Source of the DNA: Euprymna scolopes
Taxonomy: Eukaryota
Length of the DNA stretch: 64,000 bases
Reading direction: 5' to 3' (one strand)
Assembly: GCA_053919585.1 (NCBI GenBank)
Contig: CM132801.1
In this document: positions 21,541-53,529 of the stretch, in pieces
Position numbering within the stretch: the first letter of the stretch is position 1
How the letters are laid out: the number at the start of each line of letters is the position of its first letter
The notes under the pieces: generated by a model
Told to the model about the DNA's origin: nothing
Database searches by the model: none
Seen by the model: the letters and a program-made list of their open reading frames with translations, nothing else
Made by a program: the position numbers and the translations under genes

Positions 21541-22064
21541 TTTGTATAGGAAATTAGGATATGTGAATTTGCTATTTTAGACATATAAGGGAGGTAATTC
21601 TTATGTATCAAACATTTTTTAATTAAAATTTTAATTACATTTTAACTTAGTAACTTTGTATATCATTCATATTTTTAATTTAAATATTTTCTCTCTCTTC
21701 TTTTCTTCTCCTTTGAAATATTTTAGTATATTTATTTATTTATTTAAATGTTGTCTACTTTTATGATTGCTTTTAATTGTATGCATTTATTTACGGCTGT
21801 TTATGATATGGAAGTAAATCATAATACTTTGTCTTAAGTCTAATAATATAAAAGATGGCGTAAGATAACTTTCTTTCAAACTGCATTTATGAGTCGCATA
21901 GTAGCTTGTGTTGTTTTGCGCACTTTATTATTTTTTTCCTGGAGTTTATGGTCACGATTTTTGCACCTCTGAAGTCTCACTATGAAAAATCCAGGATATA
22001 TATCTTTATTGTTTCCGTGTTATATGTAAACTGTAAATGGTAATAAATTGCCTATGGGCCCCTA

Positions 22065-22269
22065 GATCATTCTGACAGACGTTAAAAACATTTAAAAATA
22101 AATGTTTAAATTTCAACGAAATTCTTCGTGGTTGACGGTGGCCGAATGAATTTATTCCTTGCTAATGGAGCCAGAGTTGGCTTCGTTGCCGGGTTCGAAT
22201 CTCCCAACCGGCGGTAATCGTGACACCCTGCACTGATGATTCCCGAAAGGATGAAACACTAGTGTGTGT

Positions 22270-22272
<3 letters not shown>
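22065..22272 (+). mobile_element. tRNA-like Pol III promoter + hammerhead ribozyme cassette, copy 1
   Basis: A-box TGGCCGAATG (22139-22148), B-box GGTTCGAATC (22192-22201), then a hammerhead core; homologous to 48510-48718 (minus). Confidence 0.75.
22227..22272 (+). ncRNA. Minimal type I hammerhead ribozyme motif (this copy has G at cleavage position 17)
   Basis: Stem I CCTGCA/TGTAGG, CTGATGA, stem II TCC-CGAAA-GGA, GAAA, palindromic stem III ACACTAGTGT. Confidence 0.7.
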
Positions 22273-22348
<76 letters not shown>

Positions 22349-39869: not shown

Positions 39870-40922
39870 TAATTACATATTAAAAATCTATCAAGTAAAC
39901 ACATATATTAAAAATAAACCCCTAAATACTCAGATTAAAAAAAAAAAATCATTAAATATTCATATATAGAAAAAAATAATCCCCAGCTTACACATATAAT
40001 AAGCCCCATACTCATGCATTAAAAACAATCAACTAAATACTCATATATCATAAATATTCCTTTATCGAAATAACAACAACCTAAATAGTCATAAATAGAA
40101 CAATTCGTTGCTTGTGTCGGTCGGCACTAATCCTATTCGGGTGTAACTGGATTCCTCCGAAGGAGGAAGTTTTATGGGAATATGAAATTCACAAGCGGTC
40201 CTCAGTTGCATGTAAATGTTAGAGGAGATGACGACGTTAGGTTTTTGCAACTCTTGCAGGGAGGTGTCGACGTCCTGCTACATACAGCGCCTGGAATTCC
40301 TAAATTGGTCATCCATTTTAGTAATAACCAGGCTCAACGTCGCTTAACTTCAGTGATCTGACGGGAACTGGTGTGTCAACGTAATTATGCCGTATAAGTC
40401 GTTGCTTACTGATATCTAAAAATCTCGTCAATACTCATGCATAAAAACTCGTCTAATTACTCATATATTAAATCTAAAACGATCATATATTGAAAAAAAA
40501 AAAAATCGCAAATACGCGTATATTAAAATAACTCCTTACATACTCATATATTGAAAAAAAAAAACTTGCTAATTAATTAAAGCCCATAAATAATCATATA
40601 TATTAAAAACAATTTCCCAACTATCCATATATTGATAAACATAACCCGAAACATTCATGTATAAAAATATCCTAAATATTCATATATTTAAAATAACCTT
40701 TTAAATACCTACATATCGAAAAACAATCGCATAAATACGCATGCCCCTAAATACTTATAAATTAAAACAACTCACAAAAATACGACGCTATAGATATCTA
40801 TATATTTGAGAAACAACTCCTATGACCTCATATAATAAAAACAACATCATAACCCCTTAAATACTAATATATTGAAAAAAGATCCTTAAATACTAATATA
40901 TTGAAAAAAGATCCTTAAATAC
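39870..40922. repeat. Degenerate minisatellite of about 30 bp, interrupted by a 5S SINE
   Basis: Recurrent CCTAAATACTCATATATT(A/G)AAAA units; perfect pair at about 40855-40922. Confidence 0.75.
40114..40398 (-). mobile_element. 5S rRNA-derived SINE (SINE3-like)
   Basis: The minus strand begins CTTATACGGCATAATTACGTTGACACACCAGTTCCCGTCAGATCACTGAAGTTAAG..., a 5S-like head of about 120 nt, followed by a body of about 165 nt. Flanked by the 9-bp direct repeat TCGTTGCTT (40105-40113, 40399-40407). Confidence 0.8.
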
Positions 40923-40937
40923 GTTTCTGCATTTTGG

Positions 40938-41393
40938 AGATGAGGATTGGTCATTCGTATTATTTGAATTCTTCGGACTACTGTTTTCATCTTGGGTATC
41001 ATTTTCACAACGTTTCGGTCGATGTAACTCCGACCTTCTTCAGGTGTATCTTATCGAACTCGGGAATGTTTCTGTCGAACTCGGGAATTTGGACGGAATT
41101 TTGAACAGACCCTTTATTTTATTCACAGGAGTAGTATGGTCTCATTCCATCAGCCATTACCGTTGCGAATTACTTAGGACCTCTATCCAGTCATGAATGA
41201 GAGTATGCTACACCCCCCCCGTGAAATAAATAAAGGGTTCTGTTCAAAGTTCCGTTCAAATTCTCGAGTTGGATAGAAACATTCCCGAGTTCGATAAGAT
41301 ACACATGAAGAAGGTCGGAGGTTACATCGACCAAAACGTGAAAATGACACTCAAGATGAGAATAGTAGTCCGAAGATTTCGAATAATACGAAT
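40938..41393. mobile_element. Foldback Penelope-derived element, family A, arms of about 195 bp with hammerhead-like cores
   Basis: Arms at about 40953-41147 and 41195-41393 are inverted. Minus strand 41006-41046 reads CAC-CTGAAGA-A-GGTCG-GAGTTACAT-CGACC-GAAACGTT-GTG. Confidence 0.8.
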
Positions 41394-47676: not shown

Positions 47677-47705
47677 ATATATGTGTGTGTGTGTGTGTGT
47701 GTGTT

Positions 47706-48035
47706 AATACGGCGCAATCACGTTGACACACTGGTTCTCGTCAGATCACCGAAGTTAAGGAACGTTGAACCTGACCTGCACCAGATGGGTGACCATTTGG
47801 GAGGCTAGGCGCTGTATGTATCGCGAGGTAAAAATACCAGGTTGAGAAACTGTCGCGGTCTATCCTTCTCTCGAAGGTAGATGGGACTCTCTTAAGCTGC
47901 GATAGGCACCCCATCTAGTGTTGGCGTCACGATAAGAAATACCCTTGATAGCTCTGGAGAAGCATCAAATATTCAGCTACCGACAAGATTTGTATTTCAC
48001 TGCAAATTCGTGTAGTGAGTTCAATGGATGGTGTG
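47706..48035 (+). mobile_element. 5S rRNA-derived SINE (SINE3-like), second body type
   Basis: TACGGCGCAATCACGTTGACACACTGGTTCTCGTCAGATCACCGAAGTTAAG...GATGGGTGACC...GCGCTGTATGTA with no T-run terminator after the head. The 3' end is approximate. Confidence 0.75.
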
Positions 48036-48304: not shown

Positions 48305-48509
48305 NNNNNNNNNNNNNNNNNNNNNNNNNNNNNNNNNNNNNNNNNNNNNNNNNNNNNNNNNNNNNNNNNNNNNNNNNNNNNNNNNNNNNNNNNNNNNNNN
48401 NNNNNNNNNNNNNNNNNNNNNNNNNNNNNNNNNNNNNNNNNNNNNNNNNNNNNNNNNNNNNNNNNNNNNNNNNCATATAAAATTATTACTATAATAATTT
48501 TTTAAATAT

Positions 48510-48718
48510 CTACAGAAACTAGTGTTTCATCCTTTCGGGAATCATCAGCGTAGGGAATCACGATTACAGCCGGTCGGGAGATTCGAACCCGGCCACGAAG
48601 CCATCTTTGACGTTGTTAGCAAGGAACAACTCCCACAGCTAACGTTAATCTTAAGAAACACAGTTGAAATTTAAACATTTATTATTAAATGTCGAGACAT
48701 CCATCTATAGTGATCTAA
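48510..48718 (-). mobile_element. tRNA-like Pol III promoter + hammerhead ribozyme cassette, copy 2
   Basis: Minus strand ...GCCGGGTTCGAATCTCCCGACCGGCTGTAATCGTGATTCCCTACG-CTGATGA-TTCCCGAAAGGAT-GAAACACTAGTTTC-TGTAG; the upstream AT-rich leader also matches copy 1. Confidence 0.75.
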
Positions 48719-48889
48719 TGATTATACCATCATGATATGCGTAGTAACCGACTTTCNNNNNNNNNNNNNNNNNNNNNNNNNNNNNNNNNNNNNNNNNNNN
48801 NNNNNNNNNNNNNNNNNNNNNNNNNNNNNNNNNNNNNNNNNNNNNNNNNNNNNNNNNNNNNNNNNNNNNNNNNNNNNNNNNNNNNNNNG

Positions 48890-50072
48890 AAGTTTATTAA
48901 GTAAATGCAAAAGTAAGCCTCAGTCCAATGAACGTATAACTGTTTATATCTCAACCAAGTACCAAGTAAAAAAACTTGATACAACAGATCGAGATAGAGC
49001 TTAATTTCATAAGTATAAATAAAAACTGCAAATCAGAAATTTATAAAATCAGATATGTCAATTATCATAAGTTAGAGGAATAATCATCCTAAGTGAGCAA
49101 TGAATATTATAACTGTTATTGTGATCGATCTATATGACTGTTTTAATACAGAAGTTAATCAAGAAATGAATTACACTAAACTTATCAATCTTGATAATAA
49201 TGGACGGGAGATAAATAAGGGTACTATTTCTGTTTGTGCTTCCACAGGTTCTATTCATCCTAGTAAATTTATTGACCGTAGCCAGATGATAATAAGAATA
49301 ATATTAATAATACTAAAAATAAATTCATATATGCTAACTATGATAACTTGCAATGTGGCAACAGTAACAATCTAGGGACGGCTTTGAAAAGATTATGTAG
49401 TTAGAATAAATTGGGGTTGAGCGTTGAAAAGGTCATGAGTAGATCGATGTGGTTATAGTAATATATCTATTCATTTTAAAGTATAATTGTAGAGAGTACC
49501 GAATTTTAACCTGGTGTATAGTCTCATTGGTAGCTACGGAAACTGCAGATTATGTTGTGGAGACATATTAAATTAAGACAGTCAAGCTAATTAAGGACCA
49601 GTATATAATTTAAAATAAATTAAACGTAAGATAAGCCGGGAATAAGTGGGGGATTAAGTAGGGTTAGTTATGAGGCAGTGGAAAGGGTGCCAGAGAGGTT
49701 AGGTAATTTCAAAGTTATTATATTTGTATTTAGCTTTATGTTTGCATAGGAATATCAACTCACTTTTAGTTTTAACCACATTTTTGCGGGGAAGTCATTA
49801 TTCTAACTGACTCGGATAAGCACAGGCGACAGATTTTGGAATATGGGNNNNNNNNNNNNNNNNNNNNNNNNNNNNNNNNNNNNNNNNNNNNNNNNNNNNN
49901 NNNNNNNNNNNNNNNNNNNNNNNNNNNNNNNNNNNNNNNNNNNNNNNNNNNNNNNNNNNNNNNNNNNNNNNNNNNGAGAAGAACATTACATTCTTTGAAA
50001 TCCGCGGAATAAAGATATTTCTCCGCCCCTTGTCTGTCGAAAAATAAATTTGTACATGTAAATTTATGATTT
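48890..50072 (-). mobile_element. Penelope-like element 3' region (GIY-YIG tail + AT-rich UTR), fragmented by gaps
   Basis: Minus strand PYSKICRLCLSESVRIM (about 49772-49847) is the PLE C.LCL.E motif; downstream is non-coding AT-rich sequence. Confidence 0.55.
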
Positions 50073-50477
50073 NNNNNNNNNNNNNNNNNNNNNNNNNNNN
50101 NNNNNNNNNNNNNNNNNNNNNNNNNNNNNNNNNNNNNNNNNNNNNNNNNNNNNNNNNNNNNNNNNNNNNNNNNNNNNNNNNNNNNNNNNNNNNNNNNNNN
50201 NNNNNNNNNNNNNNNNNNNNNNNNNNNNNNTCTATTATATTTCATTTAGTTTCTGATGAGATGTATTAAGCAATTTTGAATATTTTTGTTGTTCATCTGT
50301 ATCCATATAAAGTTGAGTTTTTGTCGCACTGACATCGATATTAAAAGCCGATTTTTCTATTTAAAAAATATTAAAACGAGCTTCTTAATATACTCGGTCA
50401 TTGATATGCGAGCTACTAAATAAAGATGAACCAATTTGCATATTCTTTGAAAAACGAACTTTCATACTGACTTTTAT

Positions 50478-50694: not shown

Positions 50695-53529
50695 AGGCTT
50701 ACATTCACGAACATCCGTGGGCTTAGAACTAATTTAGCTGATGTTGAAGCACTTCTCATAACAAATACCCCGGATATCTTAGCACTACACTCCTCCATCC
50801 CCTCTAACTACTTTAACATGCCGTAAGGACTCTGAGAGACATATGCACGGACTTGGAGTCTACATTCGTAATACCCTTCCCTTGACTAGAGAAACAAACC
50901 TAGAATCGAACGATCAAGCCTTTATGTGCTTTAGACTAAACATGCAACATAACATTAGCTACTTTTATTTTCTCTACCGCTCTCCCTCGACCCAGGACTG
51001 TACCATAATAAACAAAGTCTCTGACAGCATAGACACAGCACTCTCCCTTGACACTAGCGCACAAGTACATGTATTTGGTGACTTTAATGTCCACCACAAA
51101 AACTGGCTTGGATTCTCTACTTACACAGACGCAGCGGGCAGCACAACACATAGCTTCTCTATATCTCACTCCCTATCACAAATGGTTACGTTTCCAACCT
51201 GTTTCCCTGACCAGTAATAGCAACACGCATCACTTCTAGATCTGTTTCTGACCACAGTTCCAGATGATTGTATAACGAATGCCGACAGCCCACTTGGAAA
51301 CGCTGATCATGCATTGATAATGGTAGAAATCGCCCTAAACTCTAGACCCAAAACTGAAGAGCCAGTGCACAAAACAACGAGATATTATAAAAAGGCTGAC
51401 TGGGAAGCCATCAGAAATCTTATCAGAGATGCCCCATTGGGAAATTTTTTTCTCTTCCTGCTGAACAGTGCGCCAAGGAGACCACTGAGTGGTTCAAAAC
51501 GGCAATTGAAGCACATGTTCTCATGCGGAAATTTTATAGTAAGCCCCACTCTCCCCAATGGTTTACTTCTACTTGCGCAACTGCCATTGCTCAAAGGCAG
51601 CATGCATACCGCAGATTTAACCGACATAAGTCCAGTTCAAACAAACAGAAGTATATAGAAGCTAGAAGTAACTCTAAGAAAGAAATAGCGACAGCTAAGA
51701 GAAAATTTACTGAAACCACTAAAAAACGCATAGAAGCACAAAAATTAGGAAATCGTGACTTCTGGAAAATCTACAACAGTGTAGTAAATAATGGGCAATC
51801 AACAATTTTCCCACTAATCAACAATCACGAGGTTGTTTGTTCAGCAACCGAGAAGGCTAACATGCTTGCCAAGTCGGTTTGCTTCAAACTCCACACTGGA
51901 CCCTTTCAACCACTCCCTACCTGACTTTCCTATGCGGACGATCTGAAAATCACCCCTGCTCAGGTGATTGCTACCATAAAAAACCTTGACACTTCAAAAG
52001 CATGTGGACCCGATCTCATCCCAGCTGTGCTATTAAAAAAGTGCTCAGCCGAAGTAGCTCCAGTTCTCTCCAAACTCTGCAGTAAATCTTTTAATGAATA
52101 TTGCTTTCCGGGCTGTTGGAAAACTGCTTCTGTGGTACCAGTATTCAAGAATTCTGTCGAAAGAACTGACCCATTAAATTATCGCCCCATTAGCCTCCTT
52201 CCACTTTTTGCTAAAATATTTGAGACCTTAATTAACCATGCTCTAGTCCATCACCTTACAGATGCTAAACTTCTGACTGACCAACAATATAGATTTAGAC
52301 AAGCCCGTTCCACAGCAGACATCTTAACTGTAATCTCTGAACGTATATACCATTCACTGAACAAAGCGGGGGAGGGCAGAGCGGTAGCTCTAGATATATC
52401 TAAGGCTTTTGACAGGGTATGGCATGAGGGTCTTCTCAGGAAAATTAGATCATACGGTATCACTGGTAGAATACTTAACATAATTAAATCCTTCTTAGAT
52501 AAGAGAAAAATCCAGGTTGTCCTCGACGGTCGTACATCTAAATAATATGATATAAATGCGGGAGTGCCTCAGGGGTCTATCCTTGAACCTCTATTGTTCC
52601 TAATATTTATTAATGACCTCCTCGACAAATCTGCCTCTGAGATGGTTATATATACTGATGACACCACACTCTATAACAGGCACGACAGGAAGACGAATGA
52701 ACACATATTTAGGGAAATGGCGGAAACACTAGAGGATGACCTCCAATCTGTAGTGGAATGGGGGAAAATGGATGGTCACGCTCAATGCCGCCAAGACTAA
52801 ACTTGTTTCCTTCAATAATTACAAAAAACCTTCTCTACCACCAATAGCAATGGCCAACGACTCTTTATCTGAGAGTACATCTTTCAAACTTCTCAGCCTA
52901 ACGTTCACAGGAAACATGAGTTGAAATAATTACATTGAAAGCATTGCAAGGGCCGTTGAGAAGAAAGTATGGTCTCTCTACCGCGCTAGAAAACTACTAA
53001 CACCCGAAAGTATCCTGTACCTCTATAAGGCCACCATTCGCCCATGTATGGAGTATTGCTGTCATATTTGGGCTGGTGTATCTGCTACTAGTCTCTCGCT
53101 CCTAGACAAAGTCCAAAGGAGAGTCGCCAATTTGATAGTCCCTGAACTGGCGTCTAAGCTTCAGCCTCTGTCCGATCGACTCTGCCTGTTATACAAGTAT
53201 TTTAATGGTGAATGCTCTGACGAACTGCAAGCACTTGAACCCCCACGACGTAAACACCCTCGACAAACCCGACAGGAAGCTAAATCCCACCCCCACTCAG
53301 TAGAAATCCCTAGATGTAAAAGATCTTTCTACTCCAGTAGTTTCTTCCCCAGAACCGCTAGACTTTGGAATTCCATTCCAGTTCCCTGCTTCCCCAACTG
53401 TACTGACGTGCAGAAGTTCAAGTGTAACGTGAACCGACATCTTGCTGCTCAAATCCCTACATAGTACCCCAGTAGTTGTTGCTCCTGATAGTAGCCCCCT
53501 ACACCAGTGGCAATGTGCCTTGTTTGAGG
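50692..53529 (+). mobile_element. CR1-like LINE ORF2 (APE endonuclease + RT), decayed, family 1
   Basis: FTNIRGL, LYRSPS, GDFNVHH, LDLFLT/DH (APE), then YRPISLL, LDISKAFD, PQGSIL, YTDDT, MEYCCHIW, FFPRT; several stops and frameshifts. The 3'UTR runs into a gap. Confidence 0.93.

What the first reader, a model, noticed from the sequence alone, without database searches (positions are those of the whole stretch)
22065..22272. Pol III (tRNA-like) promoter fused to a minimal hammerhead ribozyme: a SINE/retrozyme-like system
Seen: A box, B box, then stem I-CTGATGA-stem II-GAAA-stem III-stem I', present twice (here and 48510-48718 minus). The two copies have complementary defects (GAAACACTAGTGTG versus GAAACACTAGTTTC), so their consensus GAAACACTAGTGTC restores a GUC cleavage site and a 10-nt palindromic stem III. 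Stem I stays paired in both despite sequence change (CCTGCA/TGTAGG versus CTACG/TGTAG). Known: minimal hammerheads with palindromic stem III act as dimers in Penelope-like elements and retrozymes, and Schistosoma Sm-alpha repeats pair Pol III boxes with hammerheads. Inference: a self-cleaving, Pol III-transcribed non-autonomous retroelement family, possibly undescribed in this lineage. Caveat: both copies have U-U instead of the usual G10.1-C11.1 pair.
Basis: partly seen in the sequence, partly recalled or inferred. Interest (0 to 1): 0.85.

Follow-up and report, generated by a model that had tools for sequence, protein, structure and literature searches.

The report
Hammerhead-bearing short retroelement, tRNA-like core
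The stretch is a broken, front-truncated copy of an abundant 342-base non-coding jumping element of a mollusc genome that joins a tRNA-derived piece to a self-cutting "hammerhead" RNA motif and was very probably spread by Penelope-like retrotransposons; the design is real but resembles known fluke and "retrozyme" elements.

Summary

They belong to a dispersed family: at least 5,561 first-look candidates and 1,440 exact copies of the intact 34-base core.

- **Size and layout:** the full unit is 342 nt. The tRNA-like module sits inside it, at about unit 205-290, not at its head.
- **Insertion style:** copies end about 36 nt past the cleavage site, lie in (TA)n, are 5'-truncated or preceded by a partial upstream copy, and sometimes have an inverted copy. 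This is the Penelope-like-element style.
- **Sister families:** more than 14,000 hits elsewhere in this genome share the tRNA-like-plus-hammerhead layout. One related family forms 322-nt tandem arrays, and their hammerhead helices covary.
- **Not shown:** self-cleavage and Pol III transcription. The family has U-U at 10.1/11.1, poly(A) RNA reads show no ends at the site, and 5' ends of copies do not mark a Pol III start.

Closest known relatives are the schistosome Sm-alpha elements and metazoan non-LTR retrozymes. Earlier follow-ups of this scan reached a similar reading on other DNA of this genome.

The parts
22063..22275 (+). Copy 1 of the family. It is 5'-truncated, covering unit positions 140-342 plus the first ~9 nt of the tail.
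   Evidence: BLAST of a natural 342-nt unit (L003) against the window gives 89.7% identity over unit 140-341.
22087..22106 (+). Short A/T-rich inverted repeat (AACATTTA ... TAAATGTT) inside the element. Its role is unknown.
   Evidence: Read. It forms a hairpin in the fold of a natural unit. This is the best-conserved part of the unit in sample A, at 0.96-0.98.
22130..22214 (+). tRNA-derived module, class II-like with a long variable arm.
   Evidence: ARAGORN at a relaxed threshold finds a cloverleaf in 26 of 56 family copies, against 0-2 of 56 shuffles, but the anticodon calls are inconsistent. Default ARAGORN and the Rfam tRNA model find nothing.
22139..22149 (+). A-box-like motif. It reads TGGCCGAATGA here and TGGCCGAATGG in the family majority.
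   Evidence: The family form matches TRGCNNAGTGG at 10 of 11 positions. That consensus is from established knowledge of Pol III type 2 promoters.
22192..22202 (+). B-box motif GGTTCGAATCT, lying 53 nt after the start of the A box.
   Evidence: It matches GGTTCGANNCC at 10 of 11 positions. The spacing fits a class II tRNA; sister families have the class I spacing of 44.
22227..22272 (+). Type I minimal hammerhead motif. It is dead in this copy: position 17 is G at 22266, and 10.1/11.1 are U-U.
   Evidence: Rfam HH9 scores only 16.3 bits against a gathering score of 52.
22273..22348 (.). (TA)n microsatellite directly after the element. It is the target-site context and replaces most of the 36-nt tail in this copy.
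   Evidence: In the family, (TA)>=5 lies downstream of 70% of copies and upstream of 52%, against 6% of control windows.
48486..48736 (-). Copy 2 of the family, covering unit ~121-342 plus a 28-nt tail. Its 5' side runs into a masked N stretch, which I did not fill.
   Evidence: 80.5% identity over unit 121-337; tail at 48514-48486.
48510..48553 (-). Hammerhead motif of copy 2. It has C17, but U at 16.2 and A at 1.6.
   Evidence: (Rfam Hammerhead_1 at 13.7 bits against a gathering score of 34).
48579..48589 (-). B box of copy 2 (GGTTCGAATCT). The A-box region of this copy is degenerate.

Best explanation
The two window stretches are old, inactive copies of a ~342-nt non-coding, non-autonomous retroelement of a mollusc genome, probably a cephalopod.

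**Anatomy of a unit, counted from the hammerhead cleavage site.**
- About 200 nt of A/T-rich sequence.
- A tRNA-derived module with A and B boxes, at about unit 205-290.
- A short linker.
- A type I minimal hammerhead whose stem III is a 10-nt palindrome.

**Shown: how copies were made.** Target-primed reverse transcription of the Penelope-like-element kind best explains the insertion scars:
- a fixed 3' end about 36 nt past the cleavage site;
- insertion into (TA)n;
- variable 5' truncation;
- a frequent partial upstream copy, so that a unit is flanked by two hammerheads;
- occasional inverted copies.

**Shown: relatives.** The family is a diverged relative of a 322-nt tandem-array family in the same genome. 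It belongs to a superfamily in which a tRNA-like module always sits just 5' of a hammerhead.

**Inferred: the ribozyme.** In source elements, the two hammerheads of a 1.1- to 2-unit transcript pair through the palindrome into a double hammerhead. They cut at GUC^U and release unit-length RNA. That RNA, linear or ligated into a circle, or its uncut precursor, is the template for a Penelope-like reverse transcriptase.

**Inferred, weaker: the tRNA-like module.** It may supply an internal Pol III promoter that drives transcription through the downstream hammerhead into the next (partial) unit. The sense strand of the unit has no T4 terminator.
For: - **Family size and intact cores:**
- **Unit and architecture:** a 342-nt unit, a tail of 28-39 nt in 68 of 99 copies, 5' truncation in 51 of 99, and an upstream partial copy in 23 of 99. 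There are 135 hammerhead pairs at unit spacing and rare trimers. An inverted copy is present in L007 and in sister locus L118.
- **(TA)n context:** 52% upstream and 70% downstream, against 6% of control windows. A (TA)n bias, pseudo-LTR partial tandems, 30-40-bp tails and inverted 5'-truncated copies are described for Penelope-like elements in PMC8557442.
- **No coding body:** none of 99+60 sampled copies is attached to one.
- **5' ends are enriched near one unit length:** 25 of 99 start at unit 1-36, and several more 9-17 nt upstream of the cleavage site.
- **Hammerhead core:** canonical in the majority, with GUC in 52 of 59.
- **Covariation between four sister families:** 88% of cells are paired against 77% in shuffles (0 of 500 reach the observed value). 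Six pairs and 14 cells change on both sides. The palindromes ACUAGU, ACGCGU, AUGCAU and CACGUG replace each other.
- **Dimer favoured over monomer:**
- **tRNA-like fold beyond chance:**
- **B box followed by a canonical hammerhead:** 14,277 hits against 0 for the control. A-B spacing is 44 or 53, as in class I and class II tRNAs.
- **Collinear similarity to the 322-nt array unit:** z = 5.6.
- **No T>=4 run in 379 nt at 33% T:** shuffles average 3.05 runs, P = 0.03.
- **Family RNA in three poly(A) RNA-seq runs:** the two read directions differ 3-6 fold.
Against: - **Atypical core pair:** the family has U-U in place of the nearly universal G10.1-C11.1 pair. PMC4209133 lists G10.1-C11.1 as highly conserved, so activity may be low or nil.
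- **Weak database scores:** Rfam scores stay far below gathering.
- **No within-family covariation:**
- **No sign of cleavage in RNA-seq:** reads laid on a natural two-hammerhead locus show no pile-up of starts or ends at either cleavage site. Most reads run from the tail into (TA)n, as read-through of dispersed copies would. Only a few reads and one contig continue from the tail into the next unit.
- **Strand of the RNA uncertain:** with the commonest stranded chemistry, the strand bias would mean the RNA is antisense to the ribozyme.
- **5' ends do not fit a simple cleaved template:** several copies begin 9-17 nt upstream of the site, inside stem III, rather than exactly at it. That fits a circle or a template jump better than a template cleaved at its 5' end.
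- **No trace of a Pol III start:** none appears in the 5'-end distributions.
- **The unit RNA is not unusually structured:** z = -0.56, unlike the highly self-paired circles described for retrozymes (PMC7761336).
- **No partner found:** I did not identify an autonomous Penelope-like partner sharing the 3' end. The Penelope-like fragment next to copy 2 is an unrelated repeat.
- **The family is old:** copies are 87-91% identical to the majority, with a maximum of 96%.
Confidence: 0.75

Rival explanations
1. The element is a classical tRNA-derived SINE. Pol III starts at the tRNA-like head, the transcript is the template, a LINE supplies the enzymes, and the hammerhead is a passenger.
For: - A and B boxes match their consensus at 10 of 11 positions, with tRNA-like spacing.
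- ARAGORN at a relaxed threshold finds cloverleaves beyond chance.
- The unit has no T4 run.
- Copies are dispersed and 5'-truncated.
Against: - The tRNA-like module lies about 200 nt inside the inserted unit.
- Only 3 of 99 copies start at unit 195-215, and 48 of 99 extend upstream of the module.
- Partial tandem copies, the 36-nt tail past the ribozyme, inverted copies and the (TA)n context are Penelope-type features, not LINE-type (PMC8557442).
- There is no similarity to the RTE-related Ceph-SINE bodies described in PMC5786205. This rests on comparing the quoted motif by eye only.
Confidence: 0.07
2. The stretches are fragments of the terminal repeat (pseudo-LTR) of an autonomous, coding Penelope-like element, not a separate non-autonomous family.
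For: - Penelope-like elements carry minimal hammerheads in their terminal repeats (PMC4209133).
- Copy 2 lies about 1 kb downstream of, and in the same orientation as, an ORF remnant that an earlier scan note read as the endonuclease tail of a Penelope-like element (note s1-241450).
Against: - The sequence between that ORF and copy 2 is a separate repeat with 334 first-look candidates. In other copies it ends about 150 nt before the unit and lacks the unit downstream.
- A different hammerhead, with a CCGCGG palindrome, lies beside that ORF remnant on the opposite strand and recurs in other loci of that repeat.
- In 99 sampled copies and 60 hammerhead-pair loci, nothing but the 342-nt unit, (TA)n or unique DNA adjoins the element.
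Confidence: 0.05
3. The hammerhead motif in this family is an inactive relic. The family descends from a ribozyme-bearing ancestor but lost cleavage through the change to U-U at 10.1/11.1, and spread as a plain non-coding passenger of Penelope-like machinery.
For: - U-U is fixed in 56 of 59 copies.
- Poly(A) RNA-seq shows no cleavage-site ends.
- The monomer does not fold as a hammerhead.
- Penelope-type minimal hammerheads cleave poorly in vitro even with G10.1-C11.1 (PMC4209133).
- Some Penelope-like clades thrive without hammerheads (PMC8557442).
Against: - The exact 34-mer core survives in 1,440 copies, while an exact 27-mer of the tRNA-like part survives in only 147. Copies sampled on an intact core differ most in the tRNA-like part. 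Together these suggest constraint on the core in the source elements.
- All other core positions and the GUC site are canonical.
- The palindromic stem III is kept.
Confidence: 0.2

Closest known systems
Sm-alpha / Sj-alpha SINE-like retroposons of Schistosoma (Ferbeyre et al. 1998 and Laha et al. 2000, as cited in PMC2770079)
   Same: These are short (~335 nt), non-coding, very high-copy elements that combine a tRNA-derived part with a type I hammerhead. About 2,300 Sm-alpha copies are called tRNA-Gln-like (PMC2770079). They occur both dispersed and in tandem.
   Different: - The phylum differs, and I could detect no sequence relation with the tools here.
- This family has U-U at 10.1/11.1 and a class II-like tRNA part.
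- It shows a clear (TA)n target context and Penelope-type scars.
- I could not compare where the tRNA part sits within the Sm-alpha unit, because that paper is not in the library.
Metazoan non-LTR retrozymes (Cervera and de la Pena 2020, PMC7229834; review PMC7761336; Li et al. 2026 preprint 10.64898/2026.07.22.740005)
   Same: - Non-coding units of 170-400 nt with type I hammerheads.
- A weak, palindromic helix III that needs a dimer.
- No LTR, PBS or PPT.
- Proposed mobilisation by Penelope-like elements.
- Monomers, dimers and multimers all occur.
- A sister family here forms 322-nt arrays.
   Different: - The review states that retrozymes seem to harbour no promoter, whereas here a tRNA-derived A/B-box module sits directly 5' of the ribozyme in several diverged families.
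- This family is mostly dispersed 1.0- to 1.5-mers in (TA)n, not arrays.
- No circular RNA was shown, and the unit RNA is not unusually self-paired.
Minimal hammerheads of Penelope-like element terminal repeats (Cervera and de la Pena 2014, PMC4209133) and Penelope-type insertion anatomy (Craig et al. 2021, PMC8557442)
   Same: A minimal type I hammerhead near the 3' end, a palindromic stem III, partial tandems (pseudo-LTRs), a 30-40-bp tail, inverted truncated copies, and a (TA)n bias.
   Different: - There is no ORF.
- G10.1-C11.1 is absent.
- There is no extra base between positions 9 and 10.1.
- A tRNA-like module is present.
Classical tRNA-derived SINEs, including cephalopod Ceph-SINEs (PMC5786205)
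   Same: A tRNA-related segment with A and B boxes; short, abundant and non-coding.
   Different: - In SINEs the tRNA part is the 5' head and the 3' tail comes from a LINE (RTE for Ceph-SINEs).
- Here the tRNA part is internal, and the 3' end is a hammerhead plus an A/T-rich tail in (TA)n.

Membership tests
Hammerhead ribozyme, type I | Conserved core CUGANGA ... GAAA with three helices around it | tested here: met
   The core is canonical in both window copies and in the majority of 59 copies. Helix I has 6 bp. Helix II has 3 bp plus U-U. Helix III has 3-4 bp within a 10-nt palindrome.
Hammerhead ribozyme, type I | Cleavage triplet NUH (position 17 is not G), with A15.1-U16.1 paired | tested here: met
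   The family has GUC in 52 of 59 copies, U17 in 5 and A17 in 2, and 1,440 exact cores with GUC. This is not met in window copy 1 (G17 at 22266). Copy 2 has C17 but a 15.2/16.2 mismatch.
Hammerhead ribozyme, type I | G10.1-C11.1 pair, highly conserved in natural hammerheads (PMC4209133) | tested here: not met
   U and U in 56 of 59 copies. Sister families in the genome do have G-C.
Hammerhead ribozyme, type I | Score at or above the Rfam gathering threshold (RF00163, RF02275) | tested here: not met
   Scores are 13.7-32.4 bits against gathering scores of 34 and 52. Rfam also misses the sister families that have canonical cores, so these models fit minimal hammerheads poorly.
Hammerhead ribozyme, type I | Covariation that supports the helices | tested here: met
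   There is none within the family. Between four sister families, 6 pairs and 14 cells change on both sides, and 0 of 500 shuffles reach the observed pairing. The sample is small and the sequences are related.
Hammerhead ribozyme, type I | Demonstrated self-cleavage | tested here: inconclusive
   Poly(A) RNA-seq reads show no pile-up of ends at either cleavage site of L101. Such libraries are poor at showing this, and the strand of the RNA is uncertain. An in vitro assay cannot be run with these tools.
Metazoan non-LTR retrozyme | Non-coding unit of a few hundred nt carrying a type I hammerhead, with no LTR, PBS or PPT | tested here: met
   The unit is 342 nt. No ORF-bearing body adjoins any sampled copy.
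Metazoan non-LTR retrozyme | Tandem arrangement, so that a unit is flanked by two ribozymes | tested here: inconclusive
   23 of 99 copies have a partial upstream copy that includes the hammerhead. There are 135 pairs at unit spacing and rare trimers genome-wide. Most copies are single or truncated. The related 322-nt family forms long arrays.
Metazoan non-LTR retrozyme | Expression as unit-length circular RNA | tested here: inconclusive
   Only 2-read joints and one contig run from the tail into the next unit, and these cannot be told apart from tandem DNA copies. No total-RNA or RNase R data were available.
Non-autonomous element mobilised by Penelope-like elements | Penelope-type insertion scars: partial tandem (pseudo-LTR), 30-40-bp tail, inverted truncated copy, 5' truncation, microsatellite target | tested here: met
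   compared with the description in PMC8557442.
Non-autonomous element mobilised by Penelope-like elements | An autonomous partner that shares the 3' terminal sequence | tested here: inconclusive
   No partner was found among the sampled copies. The neighbouring Penelope-like fragment is unrelated.
tRNA-derived SINE (Pol III) | tRNA-related region with A and B boxes | tested here: met
   Each box matches its consensus at 10 of 11 positions, with a spacing of 53. ARAGORN at a relaxed threshold finds 26 of 56 against 0-2 of 56 in shuffles. Default ARAGORN and the Rfam tRNA model find nothing.
tRNA-derived SINE (Pol III) | The tRNA-related region forms the 5' head, so full-length copies begin at the Pol III start | tested here: not met
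   The module lies at unit ~205-290. Only 3 of 99 copies start at 195-215, and 48 of 99 extend further upstream. Upstream partial copies show no boundary there.
tRNA-derived SINE (Pol III) | Transcription by Pol III | not testable with these tools
   Only indirect hints are available: no T4 run on the sense strand (P = 0.03), and strand-biased RNA reads of unknown orientation.

The most novel reading that the evidence does not exclude
Cephalopod retrozymes form a superfamily that carries its own tRNA-derived module directly 5' of the hammerhead.

The module could work at the DNA level as an internal Pol III promoter. That would make these the first retrozymes with a built-in transcription unit, and would answer how such elements get transcribed.

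Alternatively, or in addition, it could work at the RNA level as a tRNA mimic that recruits tRNA-processing or ligation enzymes to the cleaved RNA.

Its persistence across at least four diverged families, with different tRNA-like sequences (class I and class II spacing) and covarying hammerheads, would then reflect selection and not shared descent alone.
Probability: 0.3. Interest if true: 0.7.

Novelty: new member of a known kind. Interest (0 to 1): 0.42.

Why it matters
Hammerhead-bearing non-autonomous retroelements (retrozymes, Sm-alpha) are known, and so is their likely dependence on Penelope-like elements. As a kind, this find is therefore not new.

Three things are useful here:
- **Size of the component.** This is a very large, previously unreported component of a cephalopod-type genome: more than 5,500 candidates of this family, and more than 14,000 hits of sister families that pair a B box with a hammerhead.
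- **A constant layout.** The tRNA-like module always sits directly 5' of the hammerhead, across diverged families. A 2020 review states that retrozymes seem to lack promoters (PMC7761336). These families give a direct way to test whether Pol III drives retrozyme transcription.
- **A natural ribozyme variant.** A hammerhead with U-U at 10.1/11.1 is fixed in thousands of copies, and can be compared with G-C sister ribozymes in the same genome.

For the window itself the result is ordinary. Both copies are dead, truncated repeats.

Tried and rejected
- **Rfam at gathering and at permissive E-values,** on the window copies, 20 family copies and sister families. No hammerhead reached threshold and no tRNA appeared. 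The output was dominated by (TA)n artefacts that resemble microRNAs.
- **Default ARAGORN:** no tRNA.
Rejected: it is a separate repeat, and the adjacency is coincidental.
- **Search for an ORF in loci of that repeat:** the copies are degenerate and give no usable protein.
- **Within-family covariation of stems I-III:** none beyond shuffles.
- **Template 5' end exactly at the cleavage site.** Only partly borne out, since several copies start 9-17 nt upstream of it.
- **A cluster of upstream boundaries just 3' of the tRNA-like module** (an RNase Z-type end). It dissolved on inspection, with boundaries spread over -49 to -75.
- **A boundary at the predicted Pol III start:** not seen.
- **An unusually stable fold of the unit RNA:** not seen, z = -0.56.
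- **Literature searches** for a cephalopod hammerhead SINE, and for retrozymes with a Pol III or tRNA-like promoter: nothing found.
Full report
**What is in the window.**

At 22063-22275 (+) and 48486-48736 (-) lie two copies of one repeat. Copy 1 reads, in order:
- an A/T-rich part with a short inverted repeat;
- an A-box-like motif (22139-22149);
- a B box (22192-22202);
- CCTGCA, then CTGATGA (22233-22239);
- a short helix II;
- GAAA;
- the palindrome CACTAGTG;
- position 17, which is G at 22266;
- TGTAGG, then (TA)n.

Copy 2 has C at position 17 but a U at 16.2 and an A at 1.6. Its 5' side runs into a masked N stretch, which I left as it is.

The 208-nt stretch has at least 5,561 first-look candidates in the 5.9-Gb genome, and the 40 that were scored are 87-90% identical. 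The intact 34-mer from CUGAUGA to GUC occurs 1,440 times, against 0 for the reversed control.

In 59 copies not chosen on the ribozyme, every core position is canonical in the majority. Position 17 is C in 52, U in 5, A in 2 and never G. Positions 10.1 and 11.1 are U and U in 56. Copies are 87-91% identical to the sample majority, with a maximum of 96%, so the family is old. Run records naming mollusc metagenomes, the genome size and the number of large contigs point to a mollusc, probably a decapodiform cephalopod. Earlier notes of the scan say the same. The cephalopod assignment is an inference.

**The element is bigger than the finding, and the tRNA-like part is internal.**

Aligning copies with their flanks shows a 342-nt unit, measured from cleavage site to cleavage site. 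In 99 copies drawn in three different ways:
- the 3' end lies 28-39 nt past the cleavage site in 68;
- 51 are 5'-truncated beyond unit position 36, and window copy 1 starts at unit 140;
- 25 start at unit 1-36;
- 23 carry a partial upstream copy that includes a second hammerhead.

Inspection shows that several of the copies scored as starting at position 1 really begin 9-17 nt upstream, inside stem III. The tRNA-like module occupies about unit 205-290. Only 3 of 99 copies begin at 195-215, where a Pol III start would lie.

In 60 further loci with two hammerheads at unit spacing, the upstream boundary decays smoothly from -32 to -335. There is no step at the predicted start. An apparent cluster just 3' of the tRNA-like part dissolved on inspection.

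**Insertion style.**

(TA)>=5 adjoins the 5' end in 52% of copies and the 3' end in 70%, against 6% of control windows. Only 135 hammerhead pairs at unit spacing exist genome-wide, with rare trimers. One sampled locus has an inverted copy next to a direct one (L007), and so does a sister-family locus (L118).

Partial tandems (pseudo-LTRs), a 30-40-bp tail, inverted truncated copies, 5' truncation and a (TA)n bias are the published marks of Penelope-like elements (PMC8557442). Minimal hammerheads with a palindromic helix III are found in the terminal repeats of those elements (PMC4209133).

None of the sampled copies is joined to a coding body. The Penelope-like fragment next to copy 2 is a separate repeat of about 334 candidates. 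In other copies it ends about 150 nt short of the unit. A different hammerhead lies beside that fragment and recurs in other loci of the repeat. That adjacency is therefore coincidental.

**Is the hammerhead real?**

Rfam scores stay below gathering, at 13.7-32 bits. Rfam also misses the sister families that have fully canonical cores, so its models say little here.

Within the family there is no covariation: 45 changed cells stay paired, against 45.1 expected. This is as expected for neutrally decaying copies of one source.

Between families the picture differs. A pattern of B box, an 18-48-nt gap, CUGANGAG, a 6-22-nt gap and CGAAAC has 14,277 hits, against 0 for the control. The hits fall into several families. 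On seven representatives of four families:
- the hammerhead pairing holds in 88% of cells, against 77% in shuffles (0 of 500 reach it) and 18-47% when the partners are slid;
- six pairs and 14 cells change on both sides;
- the stem III palindrome is kept while its sequence changes (ACUAGU, ACGCGU, AUGCAU, CACGUG).

The sample is small and the sequences are related, so this is support and not proof.

Folding a natural copy gives -3.4 kcal/mol for the monomer hammerhead, against -9.5 for an alternative fold. A dimer with a 10-bp intermolecular stem III gives -24.2, against -19.0 for two monomers. This fits the double-hammerhead mode described for such motifs (PMC4209133, PMC7229834).

Against activity, the U-U at 10.1/11.1 replaces a pair that is highly conserved in natural hammerheads (PMC4209133).

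**Is the tRNA-like part real, and is it a promoter?**

ARAGORN at a relaxed threshold draws a class II-like cloverleaf in 26 of 56 copies, against 0-2 of 56 shuffles. The anticodon calls are inconsistent. The A and B boxes each match their consensus at 10 of 11 positions. Their spacing is 53, as in class II tRNAs, while sister families have different tRNA-like sequences with the class I spacing of 44.

The family majority has no run of four or more T in 379 nt at 33% T, despite 11 runs of exactly three. Shuffles average 3.05 such runs, P = 0.03. This is compatible with Pol III reading through the unit.

Against a simple SINE reading stand the internal position of the module and the 5'-end distributions above. 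An exact 27-mer of the module survives in only 147 copies, against 1,440 for the 34-mer core. Copies sampled on an intact core differ most in this region.

**RNA.**

I laid three raw poly(A) RNA-seq runs and the contigs of one more on a natural two-hammerhead locus (L101), at 80% likeness or more.
- They show family reads at depth 100-430 and none on the unique flanks.
- The two read directions differ 3-6 fold.
- No place has a pile-up of starts or ends.
- Most reads continue from the tail into (TA)n.
- Only 2-read joints and one contig pass from the tail into the next unit.

The family is therefore transcribed, mostly as read-through of dispersed copies. Neither cleavage nor circles are shown. 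The library's strand convention is unknown, and under the commonest chemistry the RNA would be antisense to the ribozyme. The unit RNA folds no better than shuffles, z = -0.56.

**Relation to the array family.**

The unit aligns collinearly with the unit of a 322-nt family that forms long tandem arrays and has a G10.1-C11.1 hammerhead. Identity is 70% over ungapped columns, and z = 5.6 against shuffles. The dispersed family of the finding is thus a diverged relative of a classical array-type retrozyme.

**Verdict.**

The best reading is an old, non-autonomous, hammerhead-bearing retroelement spread in the manner of Penelope-like elements. It is a member of a genome-wide superfamily in which a tRNA-derived module sits just 5' of the ribozyme.

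The Pol III promoter and self-cleavage are plausible but unshown. The simple picture of a tRNA-headed SINE does not fit the anatomy.

The closest known systems are Sm-alpha/Sj-alpha of schistosomes (PMC2770079) and metazoan non-LTR retrozymes (PMC7229834, PMC7761336; preprint 10.64898/2026.07.22.740005). I found no paper describing this family, or a promoter-bearing retrozyme, in cephalopods.

Earlier follow-ups of this scan (s1-263274, s1-244842) reached a similar reading on other DNA of the same genome. My tests were made independently of those notes.

Noticed in passing
window 40279-40397 (-) and 47705-47820 (+): Two 5S rRNA matches above the Rfam gathering score (69.8 and 66.1 bits).
   Followed up: no
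window 41011-41043 (-): A different minimal hammerhead motif (CUGAAGA ... CGAAAC followed by GUUGUGA), similar to motifs seen in loci L034 and L116.
   Followed up: partly
window 49772-50245 (-), and 49971 onward (+): An ORF remnant, heavily N-masked, that an earlier scan note reads as a Penelope-like endonuclease tail. Beside it, on the opposite strand, is a minimal hammerhead with a CCGCGG palindrome. The ~800-nt sequence downstream of the ORF is a repeat of its own (334 first-look candidates), and one locus has an 82-nt sub-repeat array (C17:26935095-26936983).
   Followed up: partly
window 50843-53464 (+): A run of ORF pieces that look like the endonuclease and reverse transcriptase of a non-LTR (LINE-type) retrotransposon, broken by stops or frameshifts.
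   Followed up: no
G000:C1:11251781-11257642 and C1:35132921-35137480 (locus L113): Long tandem arrays of a 322-nt unit carrying a tRNA-like B box and a canonical type I hammerhead. This is a classical array-type retrozyme, related to the family of the finding. A TTTT run lies about 30 nt after its cleavage site.
   Followed up: partly
loci L114, L115, L118, L119, L120: Further short families with class I tRNA-like modules (A-B spacing of 44). Their hammerheads have the palindromes ACGCGU, AUGCAU and CACGUG, a TTTT run 12-15 nt after the cleavage site, and insertion in (TA)n or (TAAA)n. L118 has an inverted partial copy at its 5' side.
   Followed up: partly
G000:C7:171684103-171929109: A class II tRNA D-loop pattern (GGCCGAGTGGTTAAGGC) recurs about every 3.25 kb over ~245 kb, and has 2,325 hits genome-wide. 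This is probably a large tandem array of tRNA genes.
   Followed up: no
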